Assembly (NCBI RefSeq): GCF_016432865.1
Contig: NC_067404.1
Location: forward strand, 85,250,001 to 85,314,000
Origin: Antechinus flavipes
Lineage: Eukaryota
DNA length: 64,000 bases
Reading direction: 5' to 3'
Under the pieces are notes generated by a model. It saw nothing but the letters and a program-made list of their open reading frames with translations. It ran no database searches and was not told the origin of the DNA. Position 1 is the stretch's first letter; each line of letters begins with the position of its first letter. This document shows positions 35,945 through 64,000 of this stretch, in pieces. Both the position numbers and the translations under genes were made by a program.

Positions 35945-35946
<2 letters not shown>

Positions 35947-35984: not shown

Positions 35985-35986
<2 letters not shown>

Positions 35987-36039
35987 GGTCATTGCCTCAA
36001 CCTTCCCCCAAAACCTAATCTTAAACCTAATTCCAAGGA

Positions 36040-43400: not shown

Positions 43401-44403
43401 CGGCCCCTGCCGGCCTACGGTGACCTCCTGCTGGATTACTACCTGACCCGGGGTGGACAGTGCTGGGCCGAGGGCCCGGGCCCCCTTTCCTGCAGGGAAA
43501 GTCTCCTTGTCTTCTTTCCCCCAGCTCCTTCCACGCTCCAAGGGGACGGCGGAGGTGGCACGGGCAGCCCCCTCCTTCGAGCCAAGGACCCGGCGCCCCA
43601 CGGAGGCCCCGGGCGCGGGCTGAGCGGTCGCGCCAAGTCCGACGACGGGGGCCCGCTGCCCGGTTCCTTCTGGGCGGGCCCCGGGCCGAGCCGTTACCAC
43701 GGTCAGCCGGACCAGGCGGCTGCCGATCCCCGGGTTGGTCACAAGGCTCTGGCCCTCGAGGGCCTCCGGGACTGGTACATTCGAAACGCAGGCTCGACGG
43801 GAGGGGGTCCCGTGGCGGGCCTTCACCCCTCGGCCCGGGGCCTCCTTCCAGAGGGCCAGGCCCTGCATCCCTCCCCGTTCCCCTGGCATCACTCTAGCTA
43901 CCCCCAAGGCCTCCTGCTGCACACTGCCCACGGCACCGCGGCTAGCCCCGAACCCTACCTGGGCTACGCTGGAGTGGCGCTGCCCTCCGCGGCGGCGGCG
44001 GCGGCGGCGGCGACAGCCCTACCTCACTCCCTCAGCTTCACAGCGCCTCCCGTCTCCGGCAGGTACTGAGCGAGGGCGCCCGGGGGAAGGGGGAGCCTTG
44101 GGGTTCCAGGGTGTGGGGAGGTGGGGCCGAGGGGAGCCCGGCAGTCCCTGTCCTCTGTCTGCTGCCTTTGTTTTCTCTAACGCCGATCTCTTCTCTCTCT
44201 GTCTCTGGTTCCATCTGTCTGTCTGTCTGTCTCCCTCTTGCTTCTCTTTTGTCTTTTCACTCCTCCCTCGCCCTTCCCTCACCCCAAGACACTATGCAGA
44301 CTTCCTGTACCCCCCAGAGCTGAGCTCCCACTTAAGTGACCTGGCACTGGAGGGGGACCGGCCCCTGGACTCAGATCCTCGAACCCCAGGGACGTTGGTC
44401 TGA
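40473..44403 (+). CDS. CCDC120: Coiled-coil domain-containing protein 120, 9 coding exons, ~683 aa; a shorter ...VSGRY* form arises if the 44062 donor is read through (stop 44067-44069)
   Basis: Exons: 40473-40521, 40695-40825, 41212-41328, 41514-41808, 41923-41979, 42066-42243, 42394-42492, 43052-44062, 44289-44403 (2052 nt). MEVRGQLISSP, LEREVSVQRQIAAAARRLALAP, LKSRRNSVASPT, ALEGLRDWYIRN, DFLYPPEL...TPGTLV match CCDC120. Confidence 0.95.
40866..41211 (+). repeat. Minisatellite of about 10 units of 33-35 bp filling most of the CCDC120 intron 40826-41211
   Basis: Consensus approximately TGGGAGCCCCCCACAATGGCCCCCTTCTCCCACTA repeated in tandem; the last degenerate unit ends in the CAG acceptor. 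Confidence 0.92.
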
Positions 44404-45346
44404 CCTTTCTGCCCCTGGAGACACTGGTCTGACATCTCAGTAACCCTAGCTCCACCCTGGGGGTGCTGGTCTAGATTCCTAACGTCCCGTCTCCATAAAC
44501 CTTTCCCTGCACGGAACCCAGGGATGCTGCTCCCTCGCCCCACCCTTTGCTTCCTGACCACCGTTCCTCCCAGGCCACCCCCCCGCGACCCATCTGGGTC
44601 CCGGCTGATGTGAACTGTGCAGGGCCCCCCCCTCTTTTTTCTACCTGCTCCAAGGAACTCTGGATATCGATCTGACCTGTGACCTTCCCCTCCCCACTCT
44701 CCCCAGATGGAGGAGGGGGGGCGTGGGCTTTGCGGGGAGGGGCCGGGGCTGGGTCGGACGCCCGCAGGAGAGGCTGGCAGCCCGGAGGCCATCTAACCTC
44801 TCATCCTCCCGTGTCTCCTTTCATTGCCATCAGGCCTCCAGCTGGAAGCAGGTGCCAGGCTCAGCCATTCTGGTTTGGGGGCAGGGGCTAGCCGGCGCCT
44901 CCGGAGACGGGGGGCTTCTGCCCGAGGCAAGATGCCGCTCGGGGGTCGGGGCAGAAGGCCCGGGGGCCACCAGAGGTCCCCTGCGCGCTGCTGTGAAGAT
45001 CCGGGGGGAGGGGGAGACGGGGAAGCTCCTCGGCGGGCAGCCGCGGCCACCCCGCTCCCCGTCAGGATAAAGACTCGATGCCGTCCCGGCCGTCGCGACG
45101 GCGAGGCGGGGATGCCCGCCTGCCCCTCATCTCCTGAGGATGGACGGCACGGCGTCTCCTCTCCAACCTGCACATACGTGTTCTTGCCCCTCCCTCCCAC
45201 CTAGCTCTAGTGCTGTCTCATGTGGGCAGCTTCACTCCCCAGGGGAGGGAAGAGGAAGCTTTCTTTGTGGAGGGAGTACAACGGGCCCCCTGGGTGGGTC
45301 TCTCCGGCCTCCGGGGGCAGCAACACTGGATCATTCGGGTTTCTAT

Positions 45347-45352
45347 AATAAA
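45347..45352 (+). terminator. Putative CCDC120 polyadenylation signal AATAAA
   Basis: Canonical hexamer about 940 nt after the stop, before the TE block. Confidence 0.6.
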
Positions 45353-46047
45353 CAGGTGAATGGTACTGGCCTCCACTTCCCTGACTGTCTCCAGCCTCCC
45401 CCCAAACCTCCTTCCCCTGCCCCTTTCAAGATCAAGCCTGGCATTCCTCAGTCTTTGGCCCTTTTAAGAACCAAAAAGGTGATCTCATTCCTCCAGGAGA
45501 TCTTCTAGTGATCTCACTCACTCTAGGGAATCTCCTTGATTCTAAGTGAGCTCATCCACTCTAGGTGATCTCATTCAAGGCTTTCATTCCATGTCAAAGA
45601 CAGAGACTTGGAACTACGGGGAAAACTGAGGAGGGACTTATGGTAGTCACAGGTCCCAAAAGTCCATGAAAACCAGTTCAAAGCCCCCACCCCCTTAAAG
45701 TTCAACACCAGTGAAACATGAGCTTGTCTTCCGCCCCCTTGTGGTTTCCCCGCAGAGCTCTGGTCCCACCGTGGCTTCAGCCTCCACAACCCTTACTCTT
45801 CCTCCTCCGGCTACCCTGCGCCAGCCGGTTTAACTCCGATCCATGCCCCGTGTTCAAATCTGGTCCCCCCTGCTCGTCGGCAAGCCCCGAGCACCCCCAC
45901 CTTCCTCCACGCTGGCTTCTACTCGCGTGGGGCAGAAAGGAGTCGCGGATCTGGATCGGATGGGTTCGCCACAGACTTTTCTTGGAATCTTCACCGGGCC
46001 CTCACTAAAGCAAGGAGATCCATTTATATCCCCCCATCCACTTGCCG

Positions 46048-46258
46048 GCGAGGTGGCACAGCGGATAGAACACCAGGCCGACCCGAGTTCAAAGTCAGCC
46101 TCGGACGTTTCCTCCCTGTGTGACCCTGGGCAGGTCACTCGACCCCGTTTACCTCAGTTTCCTCATCTGTCAGATGAGCTAGGGAAAGAAACGGCCAACC
46201 CTTCGGGTACCTCTGCCAGGAAAACCCTAAATGGGGTCGCAGCCACCCACAACGAAGG
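46048..46258 (+). mobile_element. MAR1-like CORE-SINE
   Basis: GGTGGCACAGCGGATAGA head, CCTCAGTTTCCTCATCTGT core, GCCAGGAAAACCC tail. Confidence 0.82.
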
Positions 46259-46289
46259 ATCGGCCGGTGCCCATCGGCTCTCCCGCTCA

Positions 46290-47040
46290 CACCCAGGGCC
46301 CTTCCCGACTCTTCCCTTCACCCTCAGGATTTCAGTGGCTCCCCTCCCCCCACCAACCCTGTCAGCTGAGAACCTCAGTCAGATTTCTCTTCCCATCACT
46401 CAGATCTCACCTCACTACTCAATAAACCCCAGTGACTCCATCACCTCCAGGATCAAATCAAGAGCCCCCTCGCCTTTTGCCATCGCCTCACTCCCCACTC
46501 AACTCCTCCCTTCTTCCCACGGCCTTTCCATTCTAACAACTTATTCCCACCCCCAACCGGTAACACTGGCCTCTTGGTTATTCCCGTACAAAGCCCCAGC
46601 AGCTTTCTAAAGCAGTCCCCCGGGCTTGGGTGGCTCCCCCTCCTCTCCCACCCCCTGGCTTCCCTGGCTGCCTTCAGATCTTGCCTCAAATAATGGCCTT
46701 TTCCCCCAGGAAGCTTTTCCTGATTTTCTTTAATTGTAAGGCCTTCCCTCTGTTAAGGAACTCCAAGTATCGCGTCATCTCCCCGTTAACCTTGCCAAGG
46801 GCACCGCCATCCTCCGGGGCGGGCAACTCCTCCCCCTCGCTCAGGCCGATTTTTGTCATCTCGACCTTCCCGGCCTCTCTACGTCCCCGGTCCTTCACTC
46901 ATCCACCCACAACTCTAATTCTGGCCCTCCTGCCCTCAACCTCCCAGGGTCGCTGTGAGAATCAACTGAGGTAACACTGGGAAAAGCACTTAGCACGGTG
47001 TCTGGCACACAGTAGCCATTTAGCAAGTACTTATTCCCTC
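46290..47040 (+). mobile_element. L2 LINE 3' region with MIR-like tail
   Basis: Pyrimidine-rich L2-like sequence (CCTCCAGGATCAAAT..., CTGGCCTCTTG) ending AAAGCACTTAGCACGGTGTCTGGCACACAGTAG. Confidence 0.65.
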
Positions 47041-47044
47041 TCCT

Positions 47045-47350
47045 CTTTCCTTGGTCAGTTATTCTGAGCAGACTCCAACTCTCTGGGACCCTAGTTGGTG
47101 TTTTCTTGGTAGAGATATTGGGCCATGTTGTTTTCGGCCATTTTCGGTTGGGTCTGAGTCTTTGTGATCCCATTTGGGGTTTTCCTGTGATGACGCTGGA
47201 GTGTTCTGCCATTTCTTTTCCCAACTTATTTCACAGATGAGGAAACTGAGGCAAACGGGGTCTGACTGACCAGGGTGATGCAGCCAGTAAATGTCTGAGG
47301 CGAGATTTGAAAACGGGAAGAGAAATCTTCCCGACTCCAGGTCCAGCACA
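47045..47350 (-). mobile_element. MAR1-like SINE(s), reverse orientation
   Basis: TTTGGGGTTTTC...GCCATTTCTTTTCCC...ACAGATGAGGAAACTGAGGCAAAC is the reverse complement of the SINE body. Confidence 0.8.
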
Positions 47351-47369
47351 TCGCCCGTTGCCCTGCCGC

Positions 47370-47900
47370 GCTGCCCATTCCCTCCCCTCTAGACTATCAC
47401 AATACTCTCCGCAGCAGACCGAGGCTAATCTCCCTGCCTTAAGCCTCCCCCCCACCCTCCCTCAGCTATCAAAGCAATTTGCCTAAAGCCCAGAGTTGCC
47501 ACTCTCCTGCCTATAGAGTTCTAGTGGCTCATTAAGCATCGCATATGAAGTCCACCATTTGCACTGCTTGGCTAATTTCCGGTCTTCCTATGGCTTCCCC
47601 CACTTCACAAACTCCTGATCTAGTAATAATCCGTCTCCTTGAAGTCCCCAGAACACGCTCCTTCGTCTCTCATCTCTGTCCCTTTGCCCTTGCACCAGAG
47701 GGTCCCTATTCCTGGAAAGCTCTGTCTCTCCTCTCCACTTCATTTTCTTGATTTTTTCCAAAAGTCAGCTGACATCACACCTGCACGATTCTCTTGCCCT
47801 CTCATCAGGGCCTCCCTTCTTGGGCCATCCCCTGTGCCACCTGCCTCTGTTTGTATCAGCCTTTCTGGGCGTTTTGCCCCCGTGCCCTCCGTGTTTAACT
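47370..47900 (+). mobile_element. L2 fragment
   Basis: CTAAAGCCCAG...CACTCTCCTGC...CAGTGGCTC-type L2 3' sequence. Confidence 0.5.
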
Positions 47901-48269
47901 GAGGCGTAACTGCCGCCCCGTTTCCAGTGGTCTTTCCTAGCGGGTCCTCAAAGAGCCAGGAGTGCCTACCCGGATTTCACAATTTCATAAAGTACCGATC
48001 GGTGGCGGAGTCGCCCTGCTAGTCCCATTCATGCATTCTCCAGTTCTAGTCAAACTGGCTGCTTCATTAACTTCCCAGACCATAGAATATTCCACCACCT
48101 ACCTCCAGTTCTTTGTGTCTGCTGTTCCCCCACGGCTGGACTATACTCCCTCTTTACCTTTACACCCTTTGAAAGCTCAAATTTCCTTAAAGACAATTCA
48201 GGTAGCAGCTAGGTTTCTTATCTTCGCAGCTGAATTTCTGAATCAGTTGTCTATAGACAGTCCCGCTGT

Positions 48270-49960
48270 TGAATAACTAGAACAAAGATCACTATTTAGA
48301 CCAGAGGGCAAGAATGAGCAAGCCAAAACGTGGCTGACCTTTAAAGAGCTCCCATTTAACTCCGAGAATGGAAAACTGGGGAAATGGAGAAAGGCGCAAG
48401 CGCCTAAAGGCAGAGTTCTACTTCCTCTGGAGGTGCTGAACTGGCATTCGGGAATTTCCCCAACAAGAAAGCCAAGAGCCTCCGAACTATCTCAAACGAA
48501 ATTATGCTGACACAGAGGGTGATGGGAAAAAGGCAACAAGAGTATTAGCCTATTGTTTTTTTAAAGCTCCTCTATGGGATCACAGAGAAGCAGCCTGACT
48601 CAGTGAACATAGCCACCGAGACCCGAGTTCAAGTCCCAGCTATGTGATCTGCACAAGTCGTAGCATGTCTCGGTGGACCATGTGGAAGAGGCCCTAGCAG
48701 AAGGAATACCCTCACTGAAATCCCAGACCGAACTACAGAATGGAGGATCGTGGCAGATCCGGGATGCTACCATCTCACAAAACAATGAGCGGTAGAGAAC
48801 GGGAAAACGAATTTACCCAAAACATGGCACACAAGTCTATGCTAAGCACGTGGAGATGGGAAGCCGCAGAGGACACAAGAGACAAACCGAAAGTGTCCCA
48901 GACGCTACCACGTCTATAACAAAGTATATTCACCAACCGTGGCGTAGAGTCCTCATCACATTCCCAAAGAACAATCTCTTGGGAAGTAATGGAGAAAAGG
49001 GTTCAAACGACAGGCCTTCAGAGGTGTTAAGGTAGACTTCTGGATACCAATCTTACACATATTATACAATAATACAACCGTGATGGCATAAAACAGAAAA
49101 GTTTTTGCACAAAGTCAAGGCAGCTCAGATTATAAGGGGAACTGGTAAGTGGGGGAATGATGCTCAGCAAGTAGTCTCAAAGGAATAGAGTCACATTTAT
49201 AAGAATAAATAAGAACCATTGCCCATTGAGAAACAGTCAAAGGATGCGCACAGGCAGTTCAAAAAAGGATGAAATCCAAACTTCAAATCACTAACTTGGA
49301 AAAGGCAAAATAAAACAACACCAAGTTCTAGTTCATGCCCATCAGATTGCCTAAAATGATCACCAAAAAAAAAGAGGAAATGACAATTGCTGGAAAGGAT
49401 GTGGGAAAATAGACATTTTGTGGCTCTGTCAGCGGAGCCGGGAACAGGTTCAGCCATTCTGGAAAACAATGTTGACTATTCTTCGAAAGTTAGAAAACCT
49501 TTGACCCAGGAATCCCATTTCCAGGTCTTTGTTCCAAAGGGATCAGAAAAAGAAGAAAAGGACCTATAGGTACAGAAATGTTTATAGCAGCTATCTCTGG
49601 TAACAATGAACAGGAAATTGAGAGGGAGGGAAATGGATCAACAAATTGTAGTATATGAATGTAGTTGCCCAATAGGTGCCATAAGAAATGACAGATGGGA
49701 TGACTCCAAGAGAAGTGATGAGGCTTGAAGGAATGGTGGAGGTGGGCAGAACCTGGGAACAATTTATACAAACACCTAACGTGACCCAGTAAAAGAACAC
49801 TGTAAAGACAGAGCTCTTGGAAAGGCACCAATGCTGACTCCAGGCAGGAAAGAAACATGACCCAGGTGGGAATCTGGCAGGGTGGGCCAGGCTTCTTGGC
49901 TTTTTCTGTTGTTTGTTTTACGGGAGTTGGAGGGAGAGAAAAGAAATGCTAGTTAATCTG
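48270..49960 (+). mobile_element. Old L1 (ORF2 3' half plus 3' UTR), interrupted by a reverse SINE at ~48590-48790
   Basis: Degenerate ORF2 C-terminal motifs (TGCTGGAAAGGATGTGGGAAAA = CW.GCGK; CAGCCATTCTGGAAAACAAT; TTTGACCCAG.AATCCCA). Confidence 0.75.
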
Positions 49961-49964
49961 CAAG

Positions 49965-50400
49965 ATTAAATGAATTAATTCATCATTAACAAATGAACAA
50001 TCTTATTAAAACCATTATATTATTATTTCCATAAGAAATTTTTATTTATTAATTTAGTTTATAATTAATGAACAAATTATGTTTATAATTTATTTTAACA
50101 TAACAGAATGTAATATATTATAGAATATATATTATTGAAATAATAAAATAATTATAAATATATAAATATAATTTGTAATGATATTTACAATGAATAGATT
50201 ACATCTAAAATACACGATAAATCAATAAATTAATAATTGGTAAAATGATTTATTTAAAATAACTTATCATGAATATAAATAAGAAATCACCATTAATTTA
50301 TTAAAAATAAAAATGACAAATAACTGTGAATTGATAAGGGATTGATACATTAATATTTTAACTAAAAATAAGTTTATATAGAATAAATTAACAAGAAACA
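49965..50400. repeat. Extremely AT-rich low-complexity block (~440 bp)
   Basis: Almost only A/T with no clear periodic unit; abuts the CpG island starting at ~50430. Confidence 0.85.
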
Positions 50401-50429
50401 GGTACTGAAGAAACAGACGAGCCCAGACT

Positions 50430-51330
50430 TCATTGGTCAGACTCACAGGTGGAGGCGAGCCACAGGCCGATGCATAGAGCGCTCGACTGCTCTGGCCTCC
50501 CTCTCACTCGGCAATCCACTTACACTATTTCGGGTTAGCGCATGCGCAACCACTTTATGCGCCCACCCCCTTTCCCAGGACCCTTAGAATATCTTTCTCC
50601 TCCTGTCACCTCCTTCCGCCAACCTCCTCCAGAAGGCCGTGCGACTGGAACCGAAAGAGGCCTGGGGGTCGCCTAAATCACCGTAGCCTCGGCTGCGCAG
50701 TCCGCCATCTTATCGCCTTAAACTTAGGTCTGGCATCGCGCGGTGCCTGCTGGGTCTTGTAGTTAGTTCGTCCCTCCGCTCACGGTCGGACTGTGGCCGC
50801 CCCGGAGACCTGACTTGCTTACCTTACCAGGCGGGCACTTCCGAGGAGGCTGAGAGGACTGGCTCGTTCGGGAGGAAAACCGCAGAGTCGGTCTCCTCGA
50901 GCACGTGCCGAGCAACTAGAGCGTGCAGAGAAGGACAACGCCTGCGCTGCCAGGCGGGAGCGGGAGCTCTCCCTCCGTCTTCCCACCCCCTCCATCCCCC
51001 GCCTTTGAACCTGCGCACAACTCCTCCCGCTTGGGGAGGTTCTGTGGGAGCCGCCGGAGCTCGAGAAAGAAAGCGAACGCTGCCCTTTTCTCATCGCGTG
51101 CCCGAACCCGGTAGCCGTGGGTACCTGGGATGGCCCGCCAGGGGCGCTCGAGCCTTTAGCCTCAAGGAGCTGCTCGGGCTCCTAGTTCGCGTATTTGGAC
51201 AGTTACTTTGTGCGCATGCTCGCTGTCCCACTCTAGACGCGGGCGAGTCTGAAAAAAAAAAAAAAAACCGCGTCCAAGCTTTGTGGCTAGGCTGCGCGTC
51301 ATGTCACGCCACGCCATTTCTACGCCACTC
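50430..51330. promoter_or_regulatory. CpG island with NRF1/YY1/E-box motifs (former GPKOW promoter)
   Basis: GCGCATGCGC 50538-50547, TGCGCATGCT 51211-51220, YY1-like AAGATGGCGG over the relic ATG, CACGTG 50902-50907, and high CpG density. Confidence 0.78.
50570..50708 (-). pseudogene. GPKOW: Disabled exon-1 relic of GPKOW (G-patch and KOW motifs protein) at its syntenic position
   Basis: Minus strand: ATG GCG GAC (MAD) at 50708 with an in-frame TAG at 50673-50675. The -1 frame gives PQASFGSSRTAFWRRLAEGGD (human, recalled: APISFGFTRTSARRRLADSGD). After another shift it reads EEKDILR (human EEKDFLK). Correct strand and order between CCDC120 and PLP2. Confidence 0.78.
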
Positions 51331-51519
51331 TTCCCTTGTGTTTCCTCCCTTCCTCCCTTCCCACTATGCTCTCGCGTTTGGGGAACGAGGGAACACCTGG
51401 GGGTCGCCCCTTTTCCAAGGGTCCTTGCTAAGGTGACGGATGAGTTCTGGAGACCAGAGTGCTAAATCGCAGGGCTTCTCCCCTTCAGAGCCCCCGACCT
51501 TGGGTGGGAAAGAAAATAG

Positions 51520-51710
51520 GTGCCCACTGTGTGCCAGGCATTGTGTTGAGTCTCGTTTGGCCCTCCCAAGAGCGCAGATAGCTGACAGCTATCACTGTCC
51601 CCATTTGACGGTTGAGGAAACAGGCAAACTGAGCTTTAGCGACAGCCCAGGACTCACACAATAAGTGTCAGAAGCCGGTTTTGAACTTCCTCAGTCCAGA
51701 TTCAGGAGGC
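51520..51710 (-). mobile_element. MIR/MAR-like SINE, reverse orientation
   Basis: CCCCATTTGACGGTTGAGGAAACAGG...GTGTCAGAAGCCGGTTTTGAAC. Confidence 0.65.
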
Positions 51711-51889
51711 AAGACCAGGCAAGCGAGGGTGGAGGCTTCAGCCCAGGGCGTGCTCCAGTGTGAACCACCTGGAGTCTGCTTTGTTTTACACCCCGGGAAA
51801 GCCAATCACTAAAATTCGGGGCTGGACAGTTTGGTCTGTTGCCTAGACTCTAAGAAAGTATTAAGAATGCAGATTAGACTTCAAAGTGC

Positions 51890-51890
<1 letters not shown>

Positions 51891-51941
<51 letters not shown>

Positions 51942-51959
51942 TTTTTTTTTTTTTTTTTT
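51891..51959. repeat. (CA)n microsatellite followed by poly-T
   Basis: Direct runs. Confidence 0.95.
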
Positions 51960-51999
51960 AAATCCTGACGGGAGGATTAGTAAACTTTTATCTGAACAC

Positions 52000-52570
52000 C
52001 TCTATCTCCTCTGGGCTGCTGAGCGCCTATGGGTGCAGTCTGAAGAAGTAGACACTGGGAGACCAAATTGCAACTTGGTGCAACCCTTTAAGTTCCCACT
52101 TTGTGGCAGGAAACACTAAAAGAGTCCTGCTCAGAAGAGCTGCTTTTGCAGGGTGGAGCTCCCAGCTCAGGTCTCTGGAGCTGTTGTGCTGACCCCACTG
52201 CCGGACGCCTCTGAAACCAGCCAGTCTAACAGCACCAGGCCCAGAAACCACTTTGGAATTGTCTTAGGAAGATTCTGAAGATCACCTGGCAAAATAAAGG
52301 AGCAGATGCTGGGGTCTCTTCTCAAAGGATATGGACCGTTTTCAGATAAAGAATCAAACTACTGCAGAGGGTGAAGTATGAGCGGGCCACGTGGTCTCCA
52401 TGCTATACACTTAGCTAAAAGACAATTTGAGGGAGAATTCACACAAGGCAGATGCTCACAAGGAAGACAGGAGAAGTGATACAAGGACACTGGCAAGGTC
52501 TCTCTGAAGAACTTTGGAAGTGATTTGGAACATGGGAGACACTGGCACTGGACCTCCCAGCAAGATGTGG
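52000..52570 (+). mobile_element. RTE LINE 3' fragment
   Basis: Degenerate KVYRAVVLT.LL.ACET and NCLRKILKITWQ.K motifs, homologous to the 31.2-31.5 kb RTE. Confidence 0.75.
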
Positions 52571-52869
52571 CCACACAAAAGAAGGCCTACCGGCTCTATG
52601 ACCGAAAGAAAAGTGAATCTGCAATTTAGAGAGAGTTCCGTTCCAAATGTTCATATGGACTAAATGCGCCCCACCTGTGGGAGAGCTTTCTGAACTCCCA
52701 CTGGTCTGTTCAGCCAGAGTCAGACATATCATCAACTTTGACCTTGATATAGCGATGTCATTTTGGTCCTCTCCTAGAGGACCTCTTTTCCTGCAGGGTA
52801 AGAGAAGTTTCTGTACCCCTATTCAGTATGGCTCTTTGAGCCAATTTGGATAAGAATGAGGTTTACTCA

Positions 52870-53670
52870 CTGTCCTTCACCTCCCTCTCTTCCCCTCCAC
52901 TGTAAAAGCTTTTTCCTTGCCTCTTTTTTTATGGCAGATAATTCGCACCATTCCACTTCTCCCTTTCCTTTTCTCCCAGCACATTCCTCTTTCATCCCTT
53001 AATCACATCATTTAAAAAAAAAAAAAAACATATCGTCCCTTCGGATTCAACTCACACCTGTCTATATAAACTCTTAAGTGCCATAATAGAGAAGGTTGTA
53101 ATGAGTTTCAAGTATCATCCTCCCATATAGGAATGTAAACAGATAAACCTTATTAAATTCCTTATGATACCACTTTCCTGATCATCTCCTTGTGCTTCTC
53201 CAAAGTCCTGTATTTGAAAATCACATTTTCCCTTCAACAATTTTCATCACGAATGCTTGAAAATCCTCTATTTTGTTGAATGATCACCTTTTCCTCCAAA
53301 GGATTATACTCAGGTTTTCTGGTTGCACTCCCAGCTCCATTGCTCTCCCGAATACCATATTCCAAGCTCTCTGGTCCTTGAATGTAGAAGCTGCTACATC
53401 TTGTGTGACCCTGACTGTGGCTCCACTATACTTGAATTGTTTCTTTCTGGATGCAATATCATCTCCTTGGCTTCTCTGGAAGTCCCAGAATCCTGGGAGT
53501 TTTCATTTGGGGATCTCTTTCAGGAGCTCATCAGTGGATTCTTACAATTTCTTTTTCACCCTCTGGTTCTAGAATGTCAGGATAGTTTTCCTTGATAACT
53601 TCTTAAAAGATGATATCCAGGCTCTTTTTTTGATCATGACTTTCAGGTAGACTAATAATCTCCCCAGTAA
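52870..53670 (-). mobile_element. L1 ORF1/inter-ORF fragment
   Basis: Reverse complement of L1 ORF1-like sequence (GATAGTTTTCCTTGATAACTTCTTAAAAGATGATATCCAGGCTCTTTTTT). Confidence 0.7.
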
Positions 53671-53779
53671 CAAGTTCTTCCTTACCCGGAATTGAAATGT
53701 ATCTTGCGGTCACCGTCTCCCAATCTAATCTAGCAGACGTGAGGTGATTGCTGCATATAAGTTCCTGGACTAGACACGG

Positions 53780-54450
53780 AAAAGTCAAGTCAACAAGCCT
53801 ATATGAAGTGCCCACTCTGTGCTAAATCCTGAAGGTACAAAGAAAAACTGAGACAAAGTCCCAGCTCTCTAAGAGTTTGGTCTAATAGCTAATAAAGATG
53901 AGATGAAAGAGACAGTGAAAAAGAGGAGAGGGTACCCTCACATGCTGGCAGAATCTAGAAGGTGAAGCATGGTGGGTCTGAGCCCTTTTTCCCAATGGAT
54001 ATGAGTTTCTTGGAGAAGCTCACCAATAAGGAAATGGGTCTGGTGGGAGATGTCTGATGACATATAGTAAGATAGGCTTAGAGATTAAGGTTCAGTGGAT
54101 TAGGCTAGACAAAGATGAATGGAAAGAAATCTGGGAGCTGGCAATCACTGACCCTTGAGGAGATCGGGAAAGGCCTCCCTCCTGCAGGAAAGCCATGACA
54201 TCTGGGCTAAGCCTTGATCAGAATGGGGATTCAGACTGCAGAGGGGGCCCAAAGTAAGCCAGGAGTGGGGGCACATTGGCCCATTTGAGCTGAAACCTGA
54301 TGTGGAAAGGTAATTGGGGGGCAAGTTGGGAAAGGCTAGAAAAGCCCAGCCAAAATTTGGATTTTAGATTTAGATTCTAGAGGAAATAGTCAAGTGACAC
54401 GGCCATTTATGCATCTTAGGAAGCTGCAGAGAGAATGGGGCAGAGGAGGG
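53780..54450 (-). mobile_element. L2 fragments
   Basis: AAGTGCCCACTCTGTGCTAAATCCTG...GTCCCAGCTCTCTAAGAG resembles the reverse L2 3' end. Confidence 0.5.
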
Positions 54451-54599
54451 GAGATGCTGGATCTCTTATATTTAGCTGCTTTTTTCTTTACCAAAGAACA
54501 CGACCTCACAGACAGAAATGGCTAATGGGGAGCGGATCCCTAAGATGAGAAAATAGTAGGAAAATACAGAGTTGCTCTGGATGATTTTGTCCCCTTTTT

Positions 54600-55760
54600 C
54601 ATGTGAATTTAGGCTGACTGTCCTGGTACCTGGAAGATAATGAGAAATGGATGAGGTACCTCCCAATTGGAAAGAAAAGGCAAGCCTTCTGATCTTTCAG
54701 AACCGACCCGCAAGGATACAGGCCAGCGAGCTTGCTGTCTGTTGGTAGGAACGGATCACAAAAGACACGAACGGGGAACATCCTTCTTTAAAAGGGACGT
54801 GGGGATTTCAGAGAGCAAGACTGAAATGCCACTTTTTCACATGATTTCTGATCCAGTCATTGGCAGGAAGGCTGTAGATGGAGTTTGCTGACATTCCTGT
54901 ACGACGTTTGGGGCATAACTCCTATTTCTGGTAAGGAGAAAATGGAGAGGTACGGATTAGACAATAATCCCATTTTCAGGTGGCGGATTCAGAACTAACT
55001 GGCTGGTCAGAGACAAAAATGAATCCTTTAAGACTCGATGTCAGCTCGGTAGGAGGTCTTCCGGGAGTGCCGTAGGGCTCTTTGTCCAGCCATAGGCTGC
55101 TTCATCTTTTAATTTTTTTCTGTTGGGTGAACTGAACAAAACCATTGGAATACTCAGCAGATCTGGAGAAGACACGTCCTAAGAGGATGGTCGGAGTCCC
55201 CAGAGTTAGGGTAGAGGGCTGAGCTGAAGTCATGTGATAAAATGCGACTGGGGATGATTGGGAAGTTATCCGTATGGGTTCGAATAATCAACTTGGGGTA
55301 GATCCAGCTATGGGGGCGGCCCGATAAAGTTTCGGGGTCTCTATGAACCAGCAGGCATCGGCCAGTCAGCTCTACTTCGTCCCGGTCACGCCACATCTTT
55401 GGTATCGTCTCCGCCTTGGGGCAGTATAGTTTAAGAGGGGCTTTGGGGAACTGGAGGGTGTGTAACGGGGAAGGGCCTCAACTCTATGTCATATGGGGAT
55501 CAATTTAAGAAGCAGAGAATGTTTAGCCTGAAGGAGGAAAAACACTGAGGGAAGTGGGGGAGAGGTCCAGGAGAAGACTGAAAAGCTTGCTTCTACATCT
55601 GAAGGGTTACCCCGTAGAAAACAAAGTCAACTATTAGTTCTGTTCAGTCCCTCCTGAGAGCAGAACCCGGAGCAGTGAGTCACATCGCCAAGACACAAAC
55701 GGAGGCCTGGTGGGCAAGCCTTCCTGACCACTGGAGTGGTCCTCAAGTGGCCAGCCAAGT
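54600..55760 (+). mobile_element. CR1/L3 LINE 3' region
   Basis: AGAATGTTTAGCCTGAAGGAG...ACTGAGGG and the downstream 3' UTR pattern are typical of L3/CR1. Confidence 0.6.
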
Positions 55761-55779
55761 CGGCCTCGCTCGAGGCGCT

Positions 55780-56050
55780 AAAGCAAAGGCAGAGAGTTGG
55801 GCACTTGGCAAGTCCCGATCCTAGCGAGGGCTCTTTTGGGATGTGGGTCGGCTGAGGAGTCCTTTAGGGTCCGTGACAGTGACGTTTCAAACCTTGGTGA
55901 CTGGGAGGATGGCGGTGTTCTCGACAGAAATGGGGAAGTGCTGAAGAGGTCTGGGCTCAGTGAAGAAAACAGGAAGGTCTGTGGATGTGTTGGCTTTGCA
56001 AGGCTTATGAAATACACCGACTTGGCGGGATGTTCATCTGGCAAAGGGGG
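55780..56050 (-). mobile_element. L2 fragment
   Basis: AAACCTTGGTGACTGGGAGGATGGCGGTG...AGAAATGGGGAAG resembles reverse L2. Confidence 0.55.
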
Positions 56051-56449
56051 CTGAAGGCAGCCGGGCCCGAAGGAGAGCTCCTGTGAGCCGACTCTCAGAA
56101 GGGATAGGGAGGGGGTGAGGTCAGGGGCACGGGATAAGGGCTTGGCCTGGTCCTGGAGATCGGGGCCAAGGGATCTGCATCCTCTGGGGACATCCTCCCC
56201 CCAAGAGGCCCAGGACTTGGGGAGGGTTATAGCTGGAGTTGGGAAGTAGTAGCCGAGTCTGGAGGGGGGAGGGGAAGAAGCTGTCAGTCAGGGCTTAGGT
56301 GCTTTTTTTCTCCCATGAGTCTTCTCCCTTTAGTCTTCCTATTAGTAGGGGCTTTTTTCTCCTATTGGTAGATTGTTGCAGCTTCACCCTGTGTCTCCTG
56401 GGGGAAAGGGAGGAGGAGGGCACGCTGTAGCTAAGTGGCTTTTTAGGTA

Positions 56450-57060
56450 GACCCGGCAAAGTAAACTTCCCTAAGTTCAGGCCCAAGAACCCGCACTGCC
56501 GACTGGGGAGTGAGCCTCCCATCGCCCGGGCGGACGGCCGTTCCAGGGAGGAAACCGCAGCTGTCCCCATCCCTCAGGCCGGGCCGGCTCGGCCCATTCT
56601 GCCTTCCCAGACTCCCACCTCGGGAGGGAGCGTGCGTTTCCCCTCCCCTGGGCCAGGAGGGCCTCCCGCCCGTTCCGAGTCCCCTCCATATAGGGAGACA
56701 GGAGCGGCGGCCCCGCCCTCACCACTCCCTCCCTGCCTCTCGCCCAGAGGTGGTGATTCACGCTGGAGCGGGGCAGGGGTGGGGTGGACAGCAGCCTCAC
56801 CTACTTCCTACTGGGCGGCGGGGGACCCAGGCTGTCGGGGATCGCCCTTGCGGCTGGAGCTGTGGGGCAGCGTCCAGCGCTTCCCAGGCAGGGAGCTCCA
56901 GGAAGGAGGGCCTCTGAAGCGGCGCCTGCCTCTCTCCCTGTGGCCCCAGGATGGCGGACTCGGAGCGCAGCGCGGCCCCGGACTGTTCGGCCGCCTGCAA
57001 GGCGTTCTCCCGAACCCGCAAGGGGATTTTACTCCTGGTCGAGACGGTGAGTGCCCCTGG
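56450..57060 (+). promoter_or_regulatory. CpG island, PLP2 promoter and exon 1
   Basis: GC boxes (CCCCGCCC, GGGGCAGGGG) and CpG density upstream of ATG 56951. Confidence 0.72.
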
Positions 57061-58871
57061 GGGCGGGGGGAGGGAAAGATCGGGGGTCGGTCGGGATGCT
57101 TGGCAGTGGGGCCTGGCGGGGCCGGGGGTGGGGGCTTGGAGCCGGTTGCCCGTGGTGAGGAAAGAAGGGTGTGTCTGAGCACGTGGAGAGGAGGAGGAAG
57201 GAGCAGCCTCGGGGTCTCTGTGGATGGGACGAGGGACGGCCCCCACTCCATCGGATCTTCTCTCTAAACGTGTGACCCAGAGAATAGGGAGGGTGGGGGG
57301 GGAGAGGAGAGAAAGGGGGAAACTGAGGCCGGATGGAGACCAAGAGAACTTTTTCCCGCGCCCCCGCGTGGAGTGGAAAGAATGGGGGTGGGGGGTGGGG
57401 GGAGAAAGGCTAGGTGAGCCGGGAGAGGCTGGCTGGGTAGGGCGGGGCGGGAAGCCAAAAAAAAAAGGTGTGTCCCCCCTCCAGAAGCCCGCGGTCTGTC
57501 TCCTTCCTCCCTGTTCTATTTTCCTCCCCTTGGGTTCTTTCTCCTCTTCCCCCTCCCCCCCCCCACCACCCTGGCAGGCCTCGGGTGCCGCTTGTTTACC
57601 TGGGCAACTCCCCACCACCGCCCCCGGGATGCTCCCTCTGGCCTTCCTCCCTCTCTCCTCTCGCTCGATGCCTGCTGGGAGATAGTCCCCCCCCCCATTT
57701 TTCTGGGCTGCTGGGGGCAAGGGAGTCTGGAGGTGGAGGTTGCGGGCCTGTGGCTCTTGCCTCAACTTCCCCTCCCCTTCTCAAACGGAGGCATCTCGAG
57801 CCACCTGTGGCTCTCCCCTCCCCCCCCACTTGAATCTGAACCGATTGATTCATTTGTTCCTTCATTCCCTGATGCCTCCGCTCACGTCCCACAGGCCAGG
57901 GGGCCGTCTGAGGCCGCCTGTGGGCCTGGGGCAAGTGGGGGGGGGGCGGGAGCCCGAGGCCCTGGGTCCAGATGGCAACTCCCCCAGGTTCCCTGAGGGG
58001 GGGGAGGGGAAGGGGTGCCTGGGAGAAATCTTGGCCCCCGCCCAAGCGGCGCCCTCTGTCGGAGGGCTGGCAGGTGGTGGGGTTCCAGCCTCGGCCTTGT
58101 CCCCCCTGTCCCCGGGCCAGGTGCTGTGCTTGGTGATCGTCATCTGTTACTCGGCCTCGCGAGTGATGGGCTACCTCAGCGTCCCCGTGGTGGAGATGGT
58201 CCTGGCGGCCGTCTTCTTTGCCATCTTCATGTTCAATGTCCATCACCAGCTGCAGTTCATCAACTGGCCCTGGACTGTGAGTGCTCCTGGGGGTCGGGGA
58301 GCAGGAAGGCCACGCCTGCCCTGGGGTGCGGGATGGGGGCTAGGGGCCGGGGCTTTCCTCCCAGAGTTCCCACCTGGCCAGCCCTGAGGATCGCTGGGGC
58401 CTTGGGGCCCACTCGCTGCTGTGTCCCGGCACCCCCCCTCACTGCTGTCCCCTCCCGCTTCCCATGCAGGACTTCTTCCGGGCTCTCATCGCCTCTGTCC
58501 TCTTCTTCATCACCTCCCTCATCACCATCATCAAAAACGTGGATGCTCAGAGTACAGTTGGAGGGGTAAGCTCGCGGGCATTCCCGCCACTCTCTTCCCC
58601 TCGGCACTGGGGGCCGGGGGCTGGCCGGTACCCGCTGCTTGTTTCTCACTCGCTCCTCCTGCCCCCAGGTGCTGGGGCTGGTGGCCACCATCCTGTTCGC
58701 CTACGACGCCTACAGCACCTTCCATACCCAGCGGAGCCGCCACACCCCCGCGGCCACCGGTGAGTACCGAGGCCGGGGGGGGGGGACCGCGGGGGGCAAG
58801 CCCCACCACGACGAGCTCTTCTTCACTTTCCCACCCTTCCCCCCGCAGAGTCTCCAGACGGCCCCTCCTAG
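56951..58871 (+). CDS. PLP2: Proteolipid protein 2 (A4, MARVEL domain), 5 exons, 153 aa
   Basis: Exons 56951-57046, 58121-58276, 58470-58565, 58669-58759, 58849-58871 (462 nt). MADSER...SRTRKGILL, INWPWT|DFFR, YDAY..F...RHT.A.T match PLP2. Confidence 0.96.
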
Positions 58872-59071
58872 CGGCGACGTGGCCGCCGTGGGCTCTCCCG
58901 CAAAAGGAGGCTGAAGAGGGGGCCCCGAGGAGAAGCCCAGAGCCCGTGGATCTCCTCTCCCTTGGCCCCCCTTCTCTGCTCCCCCGAGCTTCAGCTCTAG
59001 CCATCAGCCAAGCTGGCCCAACTTTTTCTGGAGAAATGGGCGAGAGCTGGGGGGCAGAGGGCAGGAGGAGG

Positions 59072-59088
59072 AATAAAGGGGTAATAAA
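59072..59088 (+). terminator. PLP2 polyadenylation signals (two AATAAA)
   Basis: AATAAA at 59072-59077 and 59083-59088, about 200 nt after the stop. Confidence 0.75.
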
Positions 59089-59203
59089 ATCAGCTCTTCT
59101 GTTGACCATGAGCCTCATTGGGGGGCAGCAGACACTGACATGGGGGGGGAGGGCAGCTTAACAGAAACACTTCCTGGAGCCTCAAAAACATGAAAATAAT
59201 CCT

Positions 59204-59209
59204 TTTAAT
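59204..59209 (-). terminator. Putative PRICKLE3 polyadenylation signal ATTAAA
   Basis: TTTAAT on + about 220 nt past the PRICKLE3 stop. Confidence 0.55.
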
Positions 59210-59427
59210 GAGCAGAGCCAGCCTGCCAATGGCACGGACAACACTCTAAAGGTGCTGGTGGGCCAGGGGGCCGGGCGGCCAGAACACGGACCCCGGGGTG
59301 GTAGAAGAGGGACATGGAGAGCTTCAGCTGGCATCCACTCCAACCCCCATTTATAGCTGGGGAAAATGAGGCAGAGAGCTCTGTTCCAGATCTCTTTGGT
59401 ATGGGCACGCCCGAGACCAGCCGGGCC

Positions 59428-62400
59428 TCAGGCCACGATGCAGTTCCTGTCCCTGTCTTGGTGTTGGCCCTGGCTCCGAGCCTGCCTGGGAGGCCCAGGG
59501 GGAGGCCCCCACTTCTCTTCCTTCCCCTGAGGGCCGAGAGTGGCTCTCCGTAGAGCTGGGGGCAAAGGAATGGGCTCCCCGAGGAAGTAGCCATCTTCCT
59601 CTGAGTCAGAGGAGGAGGAGGAGAGAGAAGAAGAGGAGGCCCAAGCCAAGTCCCACTCCAGGTGGTTATGGGGAGGCAGTCTCTGAGGCCACTGCCTCCT
59701 CCTTGGACAGGGCTGGACCGGAGGGCTGCATTGAGGCGGAGTGGGAGGAGGAGGGTCCTGGAGCTGCTCCCTCTCCTGGGAGGCTCGGGCCTCCGGGGGT
59801 TCTTGGAAGCTAACCCGGAGTTCCCCTCGCCGGCAGAACACAGAGCCCCCCGAGATGGCCGTCAGGTCCGGGGGACATGCGGGCCGAGGGGTCGGCCGTG
59901 GGGGCTGACGAGGAGGAGGATCCACCCGGCGGAGGCCCAGAACGGGCATGGAGTGGCGCTGTGGAGCCGCCCGGTAAAAGTGGCCGCACTCTCTGCCCGC
60001 CAGCGAGCCTGCCCTCGAGCGCGCCCGAAGCACCGTCGCGGTGGGAGCCGGGCGGTAGGTGGTGGCGGCCGCCCCCGCTGTCGCCACGGCCCCCGCCGCC
60101 TCTGCCCGAGCGGGAAGACTGCAGGCCCGAGAGCAGAAGATCTGCCCTTGCCTGGGCAGAAAGGGCTCCCCCAGCAGGGGCCGCCCACAGCGGCAGCAAC
60201 TGAAGCAGCTTTCGGAGGCGTGCCAGTGCTGCCCGCCATAAGTCATCTGGCCCTGCTCCATCCCTGGCCGGGAGAGAAAATAGAGCGTCAGGCTGGTGGC
60301 TGGTGGGGAGAAAGTGGAGGAGACCACGGCTCCCTCCTGCCCGTTCTCTTTTTCCCTTAAGGCCGAGCTCGGACGGGAGGCCCTCTGGCCACCCCTCCTC
60401 GGCCTCTAGGCTCCGGGCTCAATGGCCCACAACCTCTCCAGCCAGCGAGCGGAGGCCCAGGAAAACCTGGAAGCAAACCTTCATTGTGCTTCCTCGGGCT
60501 GCATGGGGGCACCTTCCTCACCAATGCGCTCTCCACAGCTGTCGCAGTACTGGGTGTGCCGGGCCTCGTAGCAGGCCCCGCAGTGGGGTCGGCTCCCCCT
60601 CATCACGTAGCGCTGCCCCCCCAGAGGCCCCTCACAGTCAAAGCAGCAAAAGTGTCGGATGTGCCAGTGCCGGCCTTCAGCCTCTGTGCATTCAGCTGCG
60701 AAGATGATCTGGGGTTCCAGAGGGTGGGAAGGAGATGACAGGGAAATGAGCAGACGGAAGAGCCGGGGGGCCCACGGCCAGCTTCTCCCTGCTGCCCTGG
60801 GTCTGTGGGCCCCACCCCCTGCCAAGCCCCTCCCCGGTCCCCTCAGATACTTCGTCGCAGGCTTGGCAGCGGGGCCGAAGGCACTCGGCGTGGTGGCGCC
60901 CACAGTAGATCTTCCCGGCCTGGTAGAAGTAGATGAGATCCACCAGCAGTTCGCCACAAGTCGCACAGAGGAAGCATTGGGGATGCCAGCAGGTCCCGTG
61001 GCCGGCTCGGCTGGCAAACACGGCCAGATCTCCTCCTCCGATCTGCTTCCCGCACTAGGGAAGGGCACGGGCAGGGCGCCACGTGCCAAGAAATCGGAGC
61101 AAATGAGAACAGGCGCTCCTCTGGGGCAGCCCTGCTCCCGCCTCTTCCTCTGCGGCCCTGGCACATGGCGGGTGCTTTGCCCGTGCCGGCCAACGGTCTG
61201 CCACAAAGCGTCTGCCGCCATAGGGCTGGAACACGAGACTGTGGCCCCCGGCCCCTGACCCCTCAAGGGCTTCGCCTTTTACTAGGGGAAAGAATGACCC
61301 ACAGATGCAATATTCCCCAAGTCAATCCCAAGTCTATTTAGGAGGAGGAGGTCCCAGCAGCTGAGGGAGGTGGCTGGGCCCGGATCAAGCCAGATCTCCT
61401 CAAAGACACAGCGCCCGAGCCTGGATTTGAGGAAGCAGGGTGGGGGACTGAGGGCCTTTTGGACCAAGGGGACGGCCTGCACAGGGGTGGGGGTGGGGGG
61501 ATGAAGGCGGAAGCAGAAGGTGGCAAGGGCCATTTTGGCTGTATTACAACTTGTGGAGGGCATCTATGTGGTCCGGGGCTCAAACAAAAAAGAAACAGGT
61601 GCTCCCGACTGATCCCCGAAGCCACAGGGAGAGGGTGACACGAGGGGGTGGGATCTCCTCACCTGCTCGCAGATGGCCCCGGTGATGGACACTGGGAACG
61701 CTCGCACGGCTCCCCGGCCCAGGTTTTCCCGTCTCCGCTTTTGGCTGAAGAGCTTCAGTTCCTTCTCTTCCTCCTCCTCCAGCGCTGCACAGTACTGGGC
61801 CTGATGAGGGGCATTGGGGGGGGGGGAGAACGCTTCTAAAACCATCTGAGTCCCCCACTGCTGCCGACTCAGTTCCCCGAGCTGGATGCCTTCCACAGAC
61901 CCCAGCAGGAGGGGAGGCGGGCCCCCCACCATCTCAAACACCACCCTTCCGCCCGGACACCCCAGCGAGCAGGGAGCCCCGCCAGCCAGGGCCCCGCCCT
62001 AGGGCCCTCACCCCCAATCCTCCAGCCGGTCCCCAGCTTCCCCCTCCCACCCCGCGCCATCCCTGTGAGGCTCACTGGGGCTCTCTCTCAGGCTTCCCCT
62101 ACCCGCTCTCCGCCCTCGGACTCAATGAAGGCCCGCTCTGGAAGGCTGCCCACAGTCTGGGGGAATCTCACCTCACTGTCATGTGGGGGGAGTTGTCGAA
62201 GCAGCTGTTGAACCCGGTACCTTTCCCCAAGGCTGTTCACATAAGGAACTTTGTCCTCGGGCAGACAGCTGAAAAACTGGTCCACCTGGAAACAATTGAG
62301 GGTTAAAGAGCAAAGGAGACGCCGTCATAGATGCAGGGTCACCGGGGGGAGGGGCTCTCCGCCCCCCAACACAAGCACACTTGGTTCTGCTGTCCCCCAA

Positions 62401-63894: not shown

Positions 63895-64000
63895 GGCCAC
63901 CACGGGCGGCAGTGCGCTCCCTCTTGGCAGCCCCCACCGCCCTCCCGGCCGCCAGGACTCCTCCCCCTGCTCCTCCCTCCTCCTCCTCGGTCTCCCCTCC
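63650..64000 (-). promoter_or_regulatory. CpG island, PRICKLE3 exon 1/5' region (runs off the window)
   Basis: CpG-dense around ATG 63894. Confidence 0.65.

What the first reader, a model, noticed from the sequence alone, without database searches (positions are those of the whole stretch)
45400..56400. PRAF2, WDR45, the GPKOW body and MAGIX are not recognisable in their syntenic interval
Seen: only about 11.5 kb separates the CCDC120 polyA signal from the PLP2 ATG, and apart from the GPKOW relic island it is L1/L2/CR1/RTE/SINE sequence. No PRAF2, WD-repeat, G-patch/KOW or PDZ coding exon was found by eye. Established: the human order is CCDC120-PRAF2-WDR45-GPKOW-MAGIX-PLP2-PRICKLE3. Inference: a deletion or translocation with one breakpoint in GPKOW intron 1 (near 50.4-50.5 kb) removed or moved a three-gene block while the flanking genes stayed, or the genes were relocated off the X.
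Basis: partly seen in the sequence, partly recalled or inferred. Interest (0 to 1): 0.75.

Follow-up and report, generated by a model that had tools for sequence, protein, structure and literature searches.

The report
Marsupial X gene block deleted
In this antechinus, and by annotation in four other Australian marsupials, the genes PRAF2, WDR45, GPKOW and MAGIX are missing from their old place on the X chromosome, and in the bilby WDR45 survives as an intron-free, mRNA-derived copy on an autosome: a clear but familiar kind of gene replacement.

Summary
The window is Antechinus flavipes record CM028223.1 (85.25-85.31 Mb) and has no N. Between the CCDC120 3' end (AATAAA at 45347) and the PLP2 ATG (56951), nothing matched bat, echidna, bilby, shrew, elephant or platypus WDR45, PRAF2 or GPKOW-body sequence. 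A Pfam scan of all 179 open frames of 40 aa or more also found nothing, while control genes hit strongly.

It is not an assembly error. Single short-read contigs from four organisms span 48.0-51.9 kb. The devil and dunnart assemblies are collinear with 46.96/48.47-57.4 kb.

Echidna, anole, snake, bat and tenrec keep the ancestral order GPKOW-WDR45-PRAF2-CCDC120. Three dasyurids, bilby and tammar wallaby have no annotated gene in the 10 kb upstream of PLP2.

What remains is a conserved CpG island (50.42-51.45 kb). It carries a frameshifted, stop-bearing GPKOW-like first exon shared by the three dasyurids.

Bilby WDR45 is intronless (1,086 bp for 361 codons plus stop). It is 95% identical to placental WDR45 and lies on the chromosome-1-sized record, not the record that carries PLP2.

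Best reading: the parental block was deleted after replacement by a retrogene, not moved as a block. The retrogene could not be looked for in Antechinus. The fates of GPKOW, PRAF2 and MAGIX remain open. This scan noted other orphan retrogenes (HYI, GLIPR1) in this genome.

The parts
44107..44403 (+). End of the CCDC120 coding sequence (last exon), the left anchor of the interval
   Evidence: The bat CCDC120 last-exon piece aligns to 44107-44400. blastn of bat and echidna aligns to 44283-44405.
45347..45352 (+). AATAAA, the likely CCDC120 polyadenylation signal
   Evidence: It is the only AATAAA or ATTAAA in 44.4-46.0 kb.
45400..50419 (.). Gene-free stretch where PRAF2, WDR45 and the GPKOW body should lie on the minus strand
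   Evidence: No tblastn, blastn or Pfam match. Collinear with Sarcophilus from 46957 and with Sminthopsis from 48471.
46116..46176 (.). MIR-type SINE core. It is the source of the only borderline match to the echidna locus.
   Evidence: The same window segment matches at least seven places in echidna L004.
49200..49800 (.). High-copy repeat
   Evidence: Summed contig depth is 600-4,300 against about 14-25 for single-copy sequence, in four runs.
50420..51450 (.). Orphan CpG island, the former GPKOW promoter region
   Evidence: GC is 0.60 and CpG observed/expected is 0.85. Sarcophilus has 0.87 and Sminthopsis 0.90, while flanks have 0.22-0.45. Its long open frames are not conserved between species.
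50558..50717 (-). GPKOW exon-1-like relic: ATG at 50708-50706, then two stops and at least two frame shifts
   Evidence: Three reading frames are needed to follow it. The same TAG and TAA and the same frame changes are shared with Sarcophilus and Sminthopsis. The identity with GPKOW rests on a remembered N-terminus and was not tested with a tool-supplied sequence. phmmer against PDB sequences gave 0 hits.
51892..51934 (.). (CA)n microsatellite, where short-read contigs break
52200..53800 (.). High-copy interspersed repeats
   Evidence: Summed contig depth is 1,000-136,000 in four runs, with fragmented contigs.
51451..56950 (+). Stretch where MAGIX would be expected upstream of PLP2. No PDZ-coding frame was found.
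   Evidence: Pfam on 43 plus-strand and 47 minus-strand open frames gave nothing.
56951..57049 (+). PLP2 exon 1 starting at the ATG, the right anchor of the interval
   Evidence: P0086 residues 1-33 are 100% identical.

Best explanation
The ancestral amniote block GPKOW-WDR45-PRAF2 lay between CCDC120 and PLP2. MAGIX may have lain there too. The block has been physically deleted from the X chromosome in the lineage leading to dasyurids, and very probably in the common ancestor of dasyurids, bilbies and kangaroos.

Only the GPKOW promoter CpG island survives. It carries a decayed first exon and is still CpG-rich, so it is probably still unmethylated and perhaps still a promoter.

The loss was tolerable because the function had already been taken over by mRNA-derived copies elsewhere. 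This is shown for WDR45 in the bilby, where the only annotated WDR45 is an intronless, highly conserved gene on autosomal chromosome 1. In other words, it is an 'out-of-X' orphan retrogene whose parent was later lost.

Shown: the absence, the continuity of the assembly, the ancestral order, the shared relic, and the bilby retrogene.

Inferred: that Antechinus carries the same retrogene; that retroposition came before the deletion; and that one or a few deletions, rather than slow decay, removed the block.
For: Absence, with working controls.

Continuity: there is no N. Single contigs from four organisms cross 48.0-51.9 kb with 0 to about 4% differences. The Sarcophilus and Sminthopsis chromosome assemblies are collinear at 88% and 85% identity.

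Ancestral order: tenrec and bat have CCDC120-PRAF2-WDR45. Snake has CCDC120-PRAF2. Echidna has GPKOW-WDR45-PRAF2-CCDC120. Anolis sagrei has GPKOW-WDR45-PRAF2.

Marsupials: no annotated gene lies in the 10 kb upstream of PLP2 in Antechinus, Sminthopsis, Sarcophilus, bilby or tammar wallaby.

Retrogene: bilby WDR45 (P0379) spans 1,086 bp for 361 residues plus the stop. It lies on a 934,355,481-bp record, while bilby PLP2 lies on a 704,739,007-bp record. Bilby chromosome 1 is 934.4 Mb (PMC11239497). The protein is 95.3% identical to the eutherian protein. WDR45 has introns in echidna (9.6 kb), anole (9.9 kb), bat (4.0 kb) and tenrec (3.4 kb).

Relic and island are shared by three dasyurids.

The concept of orphan retrogenes that allow parental loss is from PMC4772013.
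Against: No Antechinus or other dasyurid WDR45 sequence could be retrieved, so the retrogene is shown in one marsupial species only. No DNA was available for the bilby locus, so poly(A) and target-site duplications were not seen and dN/dS was not computed.

The fates of GPKOW, PRAF2 and MAGIX in marsupials are unknown.

The absence in bilby and wallaby rests on annotation within 10 kb, not on sequence. The stretch 45.4-46.96 kb has no independent assembly support. No American marsupial was examined.
Confidence: 0.65

Rival explanations
1. The block PRAF2-WDR45-GPKOW(-MAGIX) was moved as DNA (translocation or transposition of a segment) to another chromosome, with introns and gene order kept.
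For: The genes are absent here while the flanks are intact. The island edge at about 50.42 kb could be a breakpoint.
Against: Bilby WDR45 has no intron in its coding sequence. Its neighbours within 10 kb are only an 847-aa TPR protein, with no PRA1 and no G-patch/KOW gene.
Confidence: 0.08
2. Outright loss without replacement in dasyurids. On this reading the bilby retrogene is a bilby-lineage matter, and Antechinus simply lacks WDR45, PRAF2, GPKOW and MAGIX.
For: No marsupial-labelled WDR45 appears among the 120 best cluster representatives. The scan's notes on this genome mention none.
Against: WDR45 is conserved at 94-96% from lizard to placentals. From general knowledge, GPKOW is a core spliceosome factor, so loss of both would be extraordinary. 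At 95% identity, marsupial proteins are hidden inside the 454-member eutherian cluster, so their absence from the list means little. A blank in the notes means nothing.
Confidence: 0.12
3. Assembly artefact: a collapse or misjoin has dropped the genes from this assembly.
For: The stretch 45.4-46.96 kb has no independent check here.
Against: There is no N. Contigs of four organisms cross 48.0-51.9 kb. Two other chromosome-level dasyurid assemblies are collinear over 46.96-57.4 kb. Bilby and wallaby annotations show the same empty 10 kb.
Confidence: 0.03
4. The exons are still there but have decayed beyond recognition in place, without deletion.
For: The GPKOW-like first exon shows that decay in place does happen here.
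Against: Only about 5 kb lies between CCDC120 and the relic. Three genes occupy at least 20 kb in echidna and anole and about 7 kb for PRAF2+WDR45 alone in bat. A weakly conserved first exon is still readable, whereas the far better conserved WDR45 exons give nothing.
Confidence: 0.04

Closest known systems
Orphan retrogenes (Ciomborowska et al. 2013, PMC3548309; Carelli et al. 2016, PMC4772013)
   Same: An intronless mRNA-derived copy carries on the function while the intron-bearing parent is lost from its ancestral locus. The protein stays highly conserved. Carelli et al. report that nine of ten orphan retrogenes use CpG-island promoters.
   Different: Here the parent sat in a block of neighbouring genes that all vanished together, and the remains of the parental locus can still be seen. 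WDR45 does not occur in the main text of either paper that I could search; their tables and supplements were not held.
'Out of the X' retrogene movement in therian mammals (discussed in PMC4772013 and PMC5470649)
   Same: The parent was X-linked and the copy is on an autosome (bilby chromosome 1).
   Different: In the usual case both parent and copy persist, with the copy serving in the testis during X silencing. Here the X-linked parent is gone.
Unitary pseudogene or gene relic at a conserved syntenic position
   Same: A first exon with shared stops and frame shifts sits at the expected place and on the expected strand between conserved neighbours.
   Different: Only exon 1 and the promoter remain. 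The CpG island has stayed CpG-rich, which a dead methylated promoter would not be expected to do.
Other orphan retrogenes noted by this scan in the same genome (HYI, s1-193728; GLIPR1, s1-204717)
   Same: Same genome and the same mechanism, as claimed by other agents.
   Different: Those reports start from the retrogene. This one starts from the emptied parental locus, and the Antechinus retrogene itself has not been seen.

Membership tests
Orphan retrogene with parental loss (WDR45) | The copy lacks the parental introns | tested here: met
   The bilby gene range is 1,086 bp, which equals 361 codons plus the stop. The parental-type genes span 3.4-9.9 kb. This is shown for the bilby only.
Orphan retrogene with parental loss (WDR45) | The copy lies at a new locus away from the parental neighbours | tested here: met
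   It lies on a 934-Mb record, while PLP2 lies on a 704-Mb record. There is no PRA1 or G-patch gene within 10 kb. Chromosome 1 is 934.4 Mb.
Orphan retrogene with parental loss (WDR45) | The parental gene is absent from its ancestral locus in the same lineage | tested here: met
   Shown by sequence in three dasyurids. In bilby and wallaby it is shown by annotation only.
Orphan retrogene with parental loss (WDR45) | An intact reading frame kept by purifying selection | tested here: inconclusive
   The full-length 361-aa protein is 95.3% identical to the eutherian one. dN/dS could not be computed because no DNA was available.
Orphan retrogene with parental loss (WDR45) | Poly(A) remnant and target-site duplications | not testable with these tools
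   The bilby sample file is too large, so no DNA was returned.
Orphan retrogene with parental loss (WDR45) | The retrogene is present in the genome of the window (Antechinus flavipes) | not testable with these tools
   No tool searches this assembly by similarity. Exact-sequence look-ups and the notes gave nothing.
GPKOW exon-1 relic (unitary pseudogene) | Sequence similarity to the GPKOW N-terminus | tested here: inconclusive
   No tool-supplied GPKOW N-terminus was available, because echidna and anole loci are cut within the gene. phmmer against PDB sequences gave 0 hits. Similarity to the remembered placental N-terminus (start MAD, an SFG..RT..RRLA..GD stretch, EEKDFL) is a lead only.
GPKOW exon-1 relic (unitary pseudogene) | Disabling changes shared by related species, at the syntenic place and strand | tested here: met
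   The same TAG, TAA and frame changes occur in Antechinus, Sarcophilus and Sminthopsis. The relic is on the minus strand between CCDC120 and PLP2.
   Bilby WDR45 is single-exon and alone.
Assembly gap or misjoin | N runs or independent sequence that disagrees with the join | tested here: not met
   There is no N. Contigs and two other assemblies agree from 46.96 kb onward. The stretch 45.4-46.96 kb was not checked.

The most novel reading that the evidence does not exclude
A whole X-linked neighbourhood of housekeeping genes was erased in Australian marsupials. Each indispensable member (WDR45, the spliceosome factor GPKOW, perhaps PRAF2) was separately rescued beforehand by its own autosomal retrogene. 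That would be a clustered 'out-of-X' replacement. The orphaned GPKOW CpG island would stay active as a promoter for something else, for example an upstream start for PLP2 or a non-coding RNA.
Probability: 0.3. Interest if true: 0.65.

Novelty: new member of a known kind. Interest (0 to 1): 0.5.

Why it matters
From general knowledge, WDR45 is the gene mutated in the human X-linked neurodegeneration BPAN, and GPKOW is a core splicing factor. A mammalian clade that has emptied this X-linked neighbourhood and runs WDR45 from an autosomal, intron-free copy is a natural experiment. It bears on whether such genes need their X-linked regulatory setting and dosage compensation, and on how retrogenes acquire broad promoters.

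There is also a practical point. Orthology tables and synteny-based annotation will mislabel or miss these genes in marsupials. The leftover CpG island is a rare dated example of a promoter that outlives its gene.

Tried and rejected
1. Marsupial CCDC120 as an anchor. The big-exon query reached only proteins of 644 aa or fewer and returned no marsupial. Echidna isoform X2 was not on record.

2. Looking for marsupial WDR45 directly. The word search listed only 120 of 929 hits, and at 95% identity marsupial proteins sit inside a 454-member eutherian cluster. The bilby entry surfaced by luck. No dasyurid entry could be shown.

3. A borderline tblastn hit of an echidna piece to 46017-46139 (E 1e-5) looked like a GPKOW 3' remnant. 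It is a MIR-type SINE present many times in the echidna locus.

4. Long open frames in the CpG island (249 aa on the plus strand, 120 aa on the minus strand) are broken by indels and stops in Sarcophilus and Sminthopsis, so they are not coding.

5. Conservation along the interval is flat (0.87-0.96), so it does not single out the island.

6. phmmer of the relic against PDB sequences gave nothing.

7. No listed sequencing run that holds the stretch is recorded as RNA, so transcription of the island could not be examined.

8. Literature searches for WDR45 or GPKOW together with marsupial, opossum or retrogene found nothing relevant.

9. Repeat classes (L1, L2, CR1, RTE) could not be verified. 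There were no reverse-transcriptase hits and few in-session repeat copies.

Exons were searched one by one by reference or as open-frame pieces, and the joined step was left out.


Full report
**What the window is.** PLP2 exon 2 of the window is 100% identical to Antechinus flavipes PLP2 (P0086). The locus fetched with that protein (L002: GCA_016432865.2, CM028223.1, 85,296,951-85,318,871) is 100% identical to window 46951-64000. The window is therefore CM028223.1 85,250,001-85,314,000, about 1.3 Mb from the end of an 86.6-Mb record. It contains no N.

Open frames and alignments give this gene order:
- KCND1 (minus strand, about 2-6.4 kb)
- GRIPAP1 (minus, about 7.8-14.8 kb)
- TFE3 (minus, about 16-22.7 kb)
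- an AT-rich stretch at 24-37 kb
- CCDC120 (plus, about 37.9-45.4 kb)
- the interval under study
- PLP2 (plus, from 56951)
- PRICKLE3 (minus, 59.4-64 kb)

**The observation.** CCDC120 coding sequence ends at about 44403, and the only AATAAA nearby is at 45347. The PLP2 ATG is at 56951.

Protein queries came only from tools:
- a bat locus with PRAF2 and WDR45 (L003)
- an echidna locus with most of GPKOW, all of WDR45, the last PRAF2 exon and CCDC120 (L004)
- full-length WDR45 of bilby, echidna and a eutherian cluster representative
- PRAF2 of Sorex and Elephas
- a platypus WDR45-PRAF2 read-through model

Exons were used as separate open-frame pieces or as database proteins.

None of these queries gives any match in the 64-kb window better than E about 1, except low-complexity noise and one MIR-type SINE. 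The controls worked. CCDC120 is only about 45% identical between bat and antechinus, yet it hits at 1e-14 to 1e-22. PLP2 hits at 1e-18 to 1e-33. DNA-level blastn finds only CCDC120 exons and the SINE core. A Pfam scan of all 179 open frames of 40 aa or more, in six frames over 45.1-57 kb, finds no PRA1, WD40/PROPPIN, G-patch, KOW, GPKOW_C or PDZ domain.

The absence is real. Contig depth shows high-copy repeats at 49.2-49.8 and 52.2-53.8 kb and single-copy sequence at 48.0-49.0 kb. No reverse-transcriptase domain turned up.

**Not an assembly error.** Single Logan contigs cross 48001-51884 or 48001-51268 in four runs from four organisms. They show 0, about 1%, about 1.3% and about 4% differences. 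These contigs cover the proposed breakpoint and the whole CpG island. The chromosome-level assemblies of Sarcophilus harrisii (L006) and Sminthopsis crassicaudata (L005) are collinear with window 46957-57384 (88% identity) and 48471-57354 (85%). Only 45.4-46.96 kb lacks an independent check.

**The ancestral state.**

| Species | Order found |
|---|---|
| Tenrec, bat | CCDC120, PRAF2 (178 aa), WDR45 (361-362 aa, with introns) |
| Garter snake | CCDC120, then a PRA1-family gene |
| Echidna | GPKOW, WDR45 (9.6 kb), PRAF2 (unannotated; last exon at L004 23370-23507), CCDC120 |
| Anolis sagrei | GPKOW, WDR45 (9.9 kb), PRAF2, on the record that also carries its CCDC120 |

The block next to CCDC120 is therefore ancestral to amniotes. 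The outgroups do not rescue the idea that the genes were never there. The MAGIX-PLP2 side could not be checked in any outgroup.

**Other marsupials.** No gene is annotated in the 10 kb upstream of PLP2 in Antechinus, Sminthopsis, Sarcophilus, bilby or tammar wallaby. The downstream neighbours PRICKLE3 and a 299- to 316-aa MARVEL gene are the same in all five. That covers three Australian orders. For bilby and wallaby it is annotation only, because no DNA was returned.

**What remains in the interval.** A 1-kb CpG island lies at 50.42-51.45 kb, with GC 0.60 and CpG observed/expected 0.85. It has an ATG followed by a stop after 11 codons. It then continues in a second frame to another stop, and in a third frame reads a short stretch including EEKDFL.

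The same stops and frame changes are present in Sarcophilus and Sminthopsis, so the damage predates the dasyurid radiation. The match to GPKOW rests on my memory of the placental N-terminus. No tool gave me that part of GPKOW, and a phmmer search of the PDB found nothing. I treat it as likely, not tested.

The island is equally CpG-rich in all three dasyurids (0.85-0.90), against 0.22-0.45 in the flanks. This suggests it is still kept unmethylated. Its long open frames are not conserved, and it is no better conserved than its surroundings.

**Where WDR45 went.** A single-exon query against the representative library, followed by a word search with a WDR45-PRAF2 read-through model, gave 929 relatives. 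No marsupial was among the 120 shown. The 454-member eutherian cluster, however, contains WDR45 of the bilby, Macrotis lagotis (P0379, XP_074072345.1).

Its gene spans exactly 1,086 bp, which is 361 codons plus the stop, so the coding sequence has no intron. It lies on a 934,355,481-bp record. An 847-aa TPR protein gene is the only neighbour within 10 kb. Bilby PLP2 lies on a 704,739,007-bp record. The bilby genome paper gives chromosome 1 as 934,426,298 bp and describes the X as a compound of the ancestral X with an autosome arm (PMC11239497). The protein is 95.3% identical to the eutherian one and 93.9% identical to echidna's. This is the signature of a functional retrogene that replaced its X-linked parent.

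**Mechanism.** A WDR45 mRNA was reverse-transcribed and inserted on an autosome in an ancestor of at least bilbies. By parsimony this was also an ancestor of dasyurids and kangaroos, which share the emptied locus. Once that copy was expressed, the X-linked parent was dispensable. One or more deletions then removed everything from GPKOW intron 1 to beyond PRAF2.

Deletion, rather than slow decay, is indicated in two ways. Only about 5 kb separates CCDC120 from the relic. A weakly conserved first exon is still legible, while the very conserved WDR45 exons leave no trace.

The order of events, the presence of the retrogene in Antechinus, and the fates of GPKOW, PRAF2 and MAGIX are inferences or remain open. 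Carelli et al. 2016 (PMC4772013) describe ten such orphan retrogene families and note that parental loss can follow. WDR45 does not occur in the searchable text of that paper, and its tables were not held.

**Limits.** No tool here searches a marsupial genome by similarity, so I could not look for the Antechinus retrogene or for GPKOW, PRAF2 or MAGIX elsewhere. No listed run that holds the stretch is recorded as RNA. No human contig was fetched or compared.

**Verdict.** This is a new example of a known process, of moderate interest. It would be of higher interest if GPKOW and PRAF2 prove to have been rescued in the same way.

Noticed in passing
window 2780-2892 (-): A full-length Rfam match to K_chan_RES (potassium channel RNA editing signal; 78.8 bits against a gathering score of 51) lies inside the KCND1 coding region. 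From general knowledge, the family was described for Kv1-type channels.
   Followed up: no
L005 8855-9415 (Sminthopsis), unit = window 56296-56365: A 63-72-bp unit is present once upstream of PLP2 in Antechinus. In Sminthopsis it is expanded into a tandem array of about nine copies just upstream of the PLP2 promoter.
   Followed up: partly
L004 23370-23507 (+), echidna: The echidna PRAF2 last exon is present (91-93% identical to PRAF2 proteins) between WDR45 and CCDC120. No PRAF2 gene is in the list of called genes for that locus.
   Followed up: partly
proteins P0099, P0251, P0253: WDR45-PRAF2 read-through protein models of 290-292 aa are on record in pig, primates, bats, mouse and platypus. 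This suggests a conserved read-through or fusion transcript of the two neighbouring genes where the block survives.
   Followed up: no
L002 12478-16752 (-) = window about 59.4-63.7 kb: The A. flavipes PRICKLE3 product (632 aa) has no Pfam family on record. Its orthologs in bilby, dunnart, devil and wallaby list PET and LIM, and LIM-like sequence is plainly present in the window (60695-61054, minus strand).
   Followed up: no
L006 10001-11547 (Sarcophilus): The devil PLP2 model is 137 aa, against 153 aa in the other four marsupials, and has no MARVEL hit on record. It is probably a mis-modelled exon.
   Followed up: no
window 24000-37000: A 13-kb AT-rich (about 40% GC), CpG-poor stretch separates TFE3 from CCDC120 in an otherwise 55-70% GC region. 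It holds LINE-like open frames at, for example, 26203-26820 and 27411-27770 (both minus strand).
   Followed up: no
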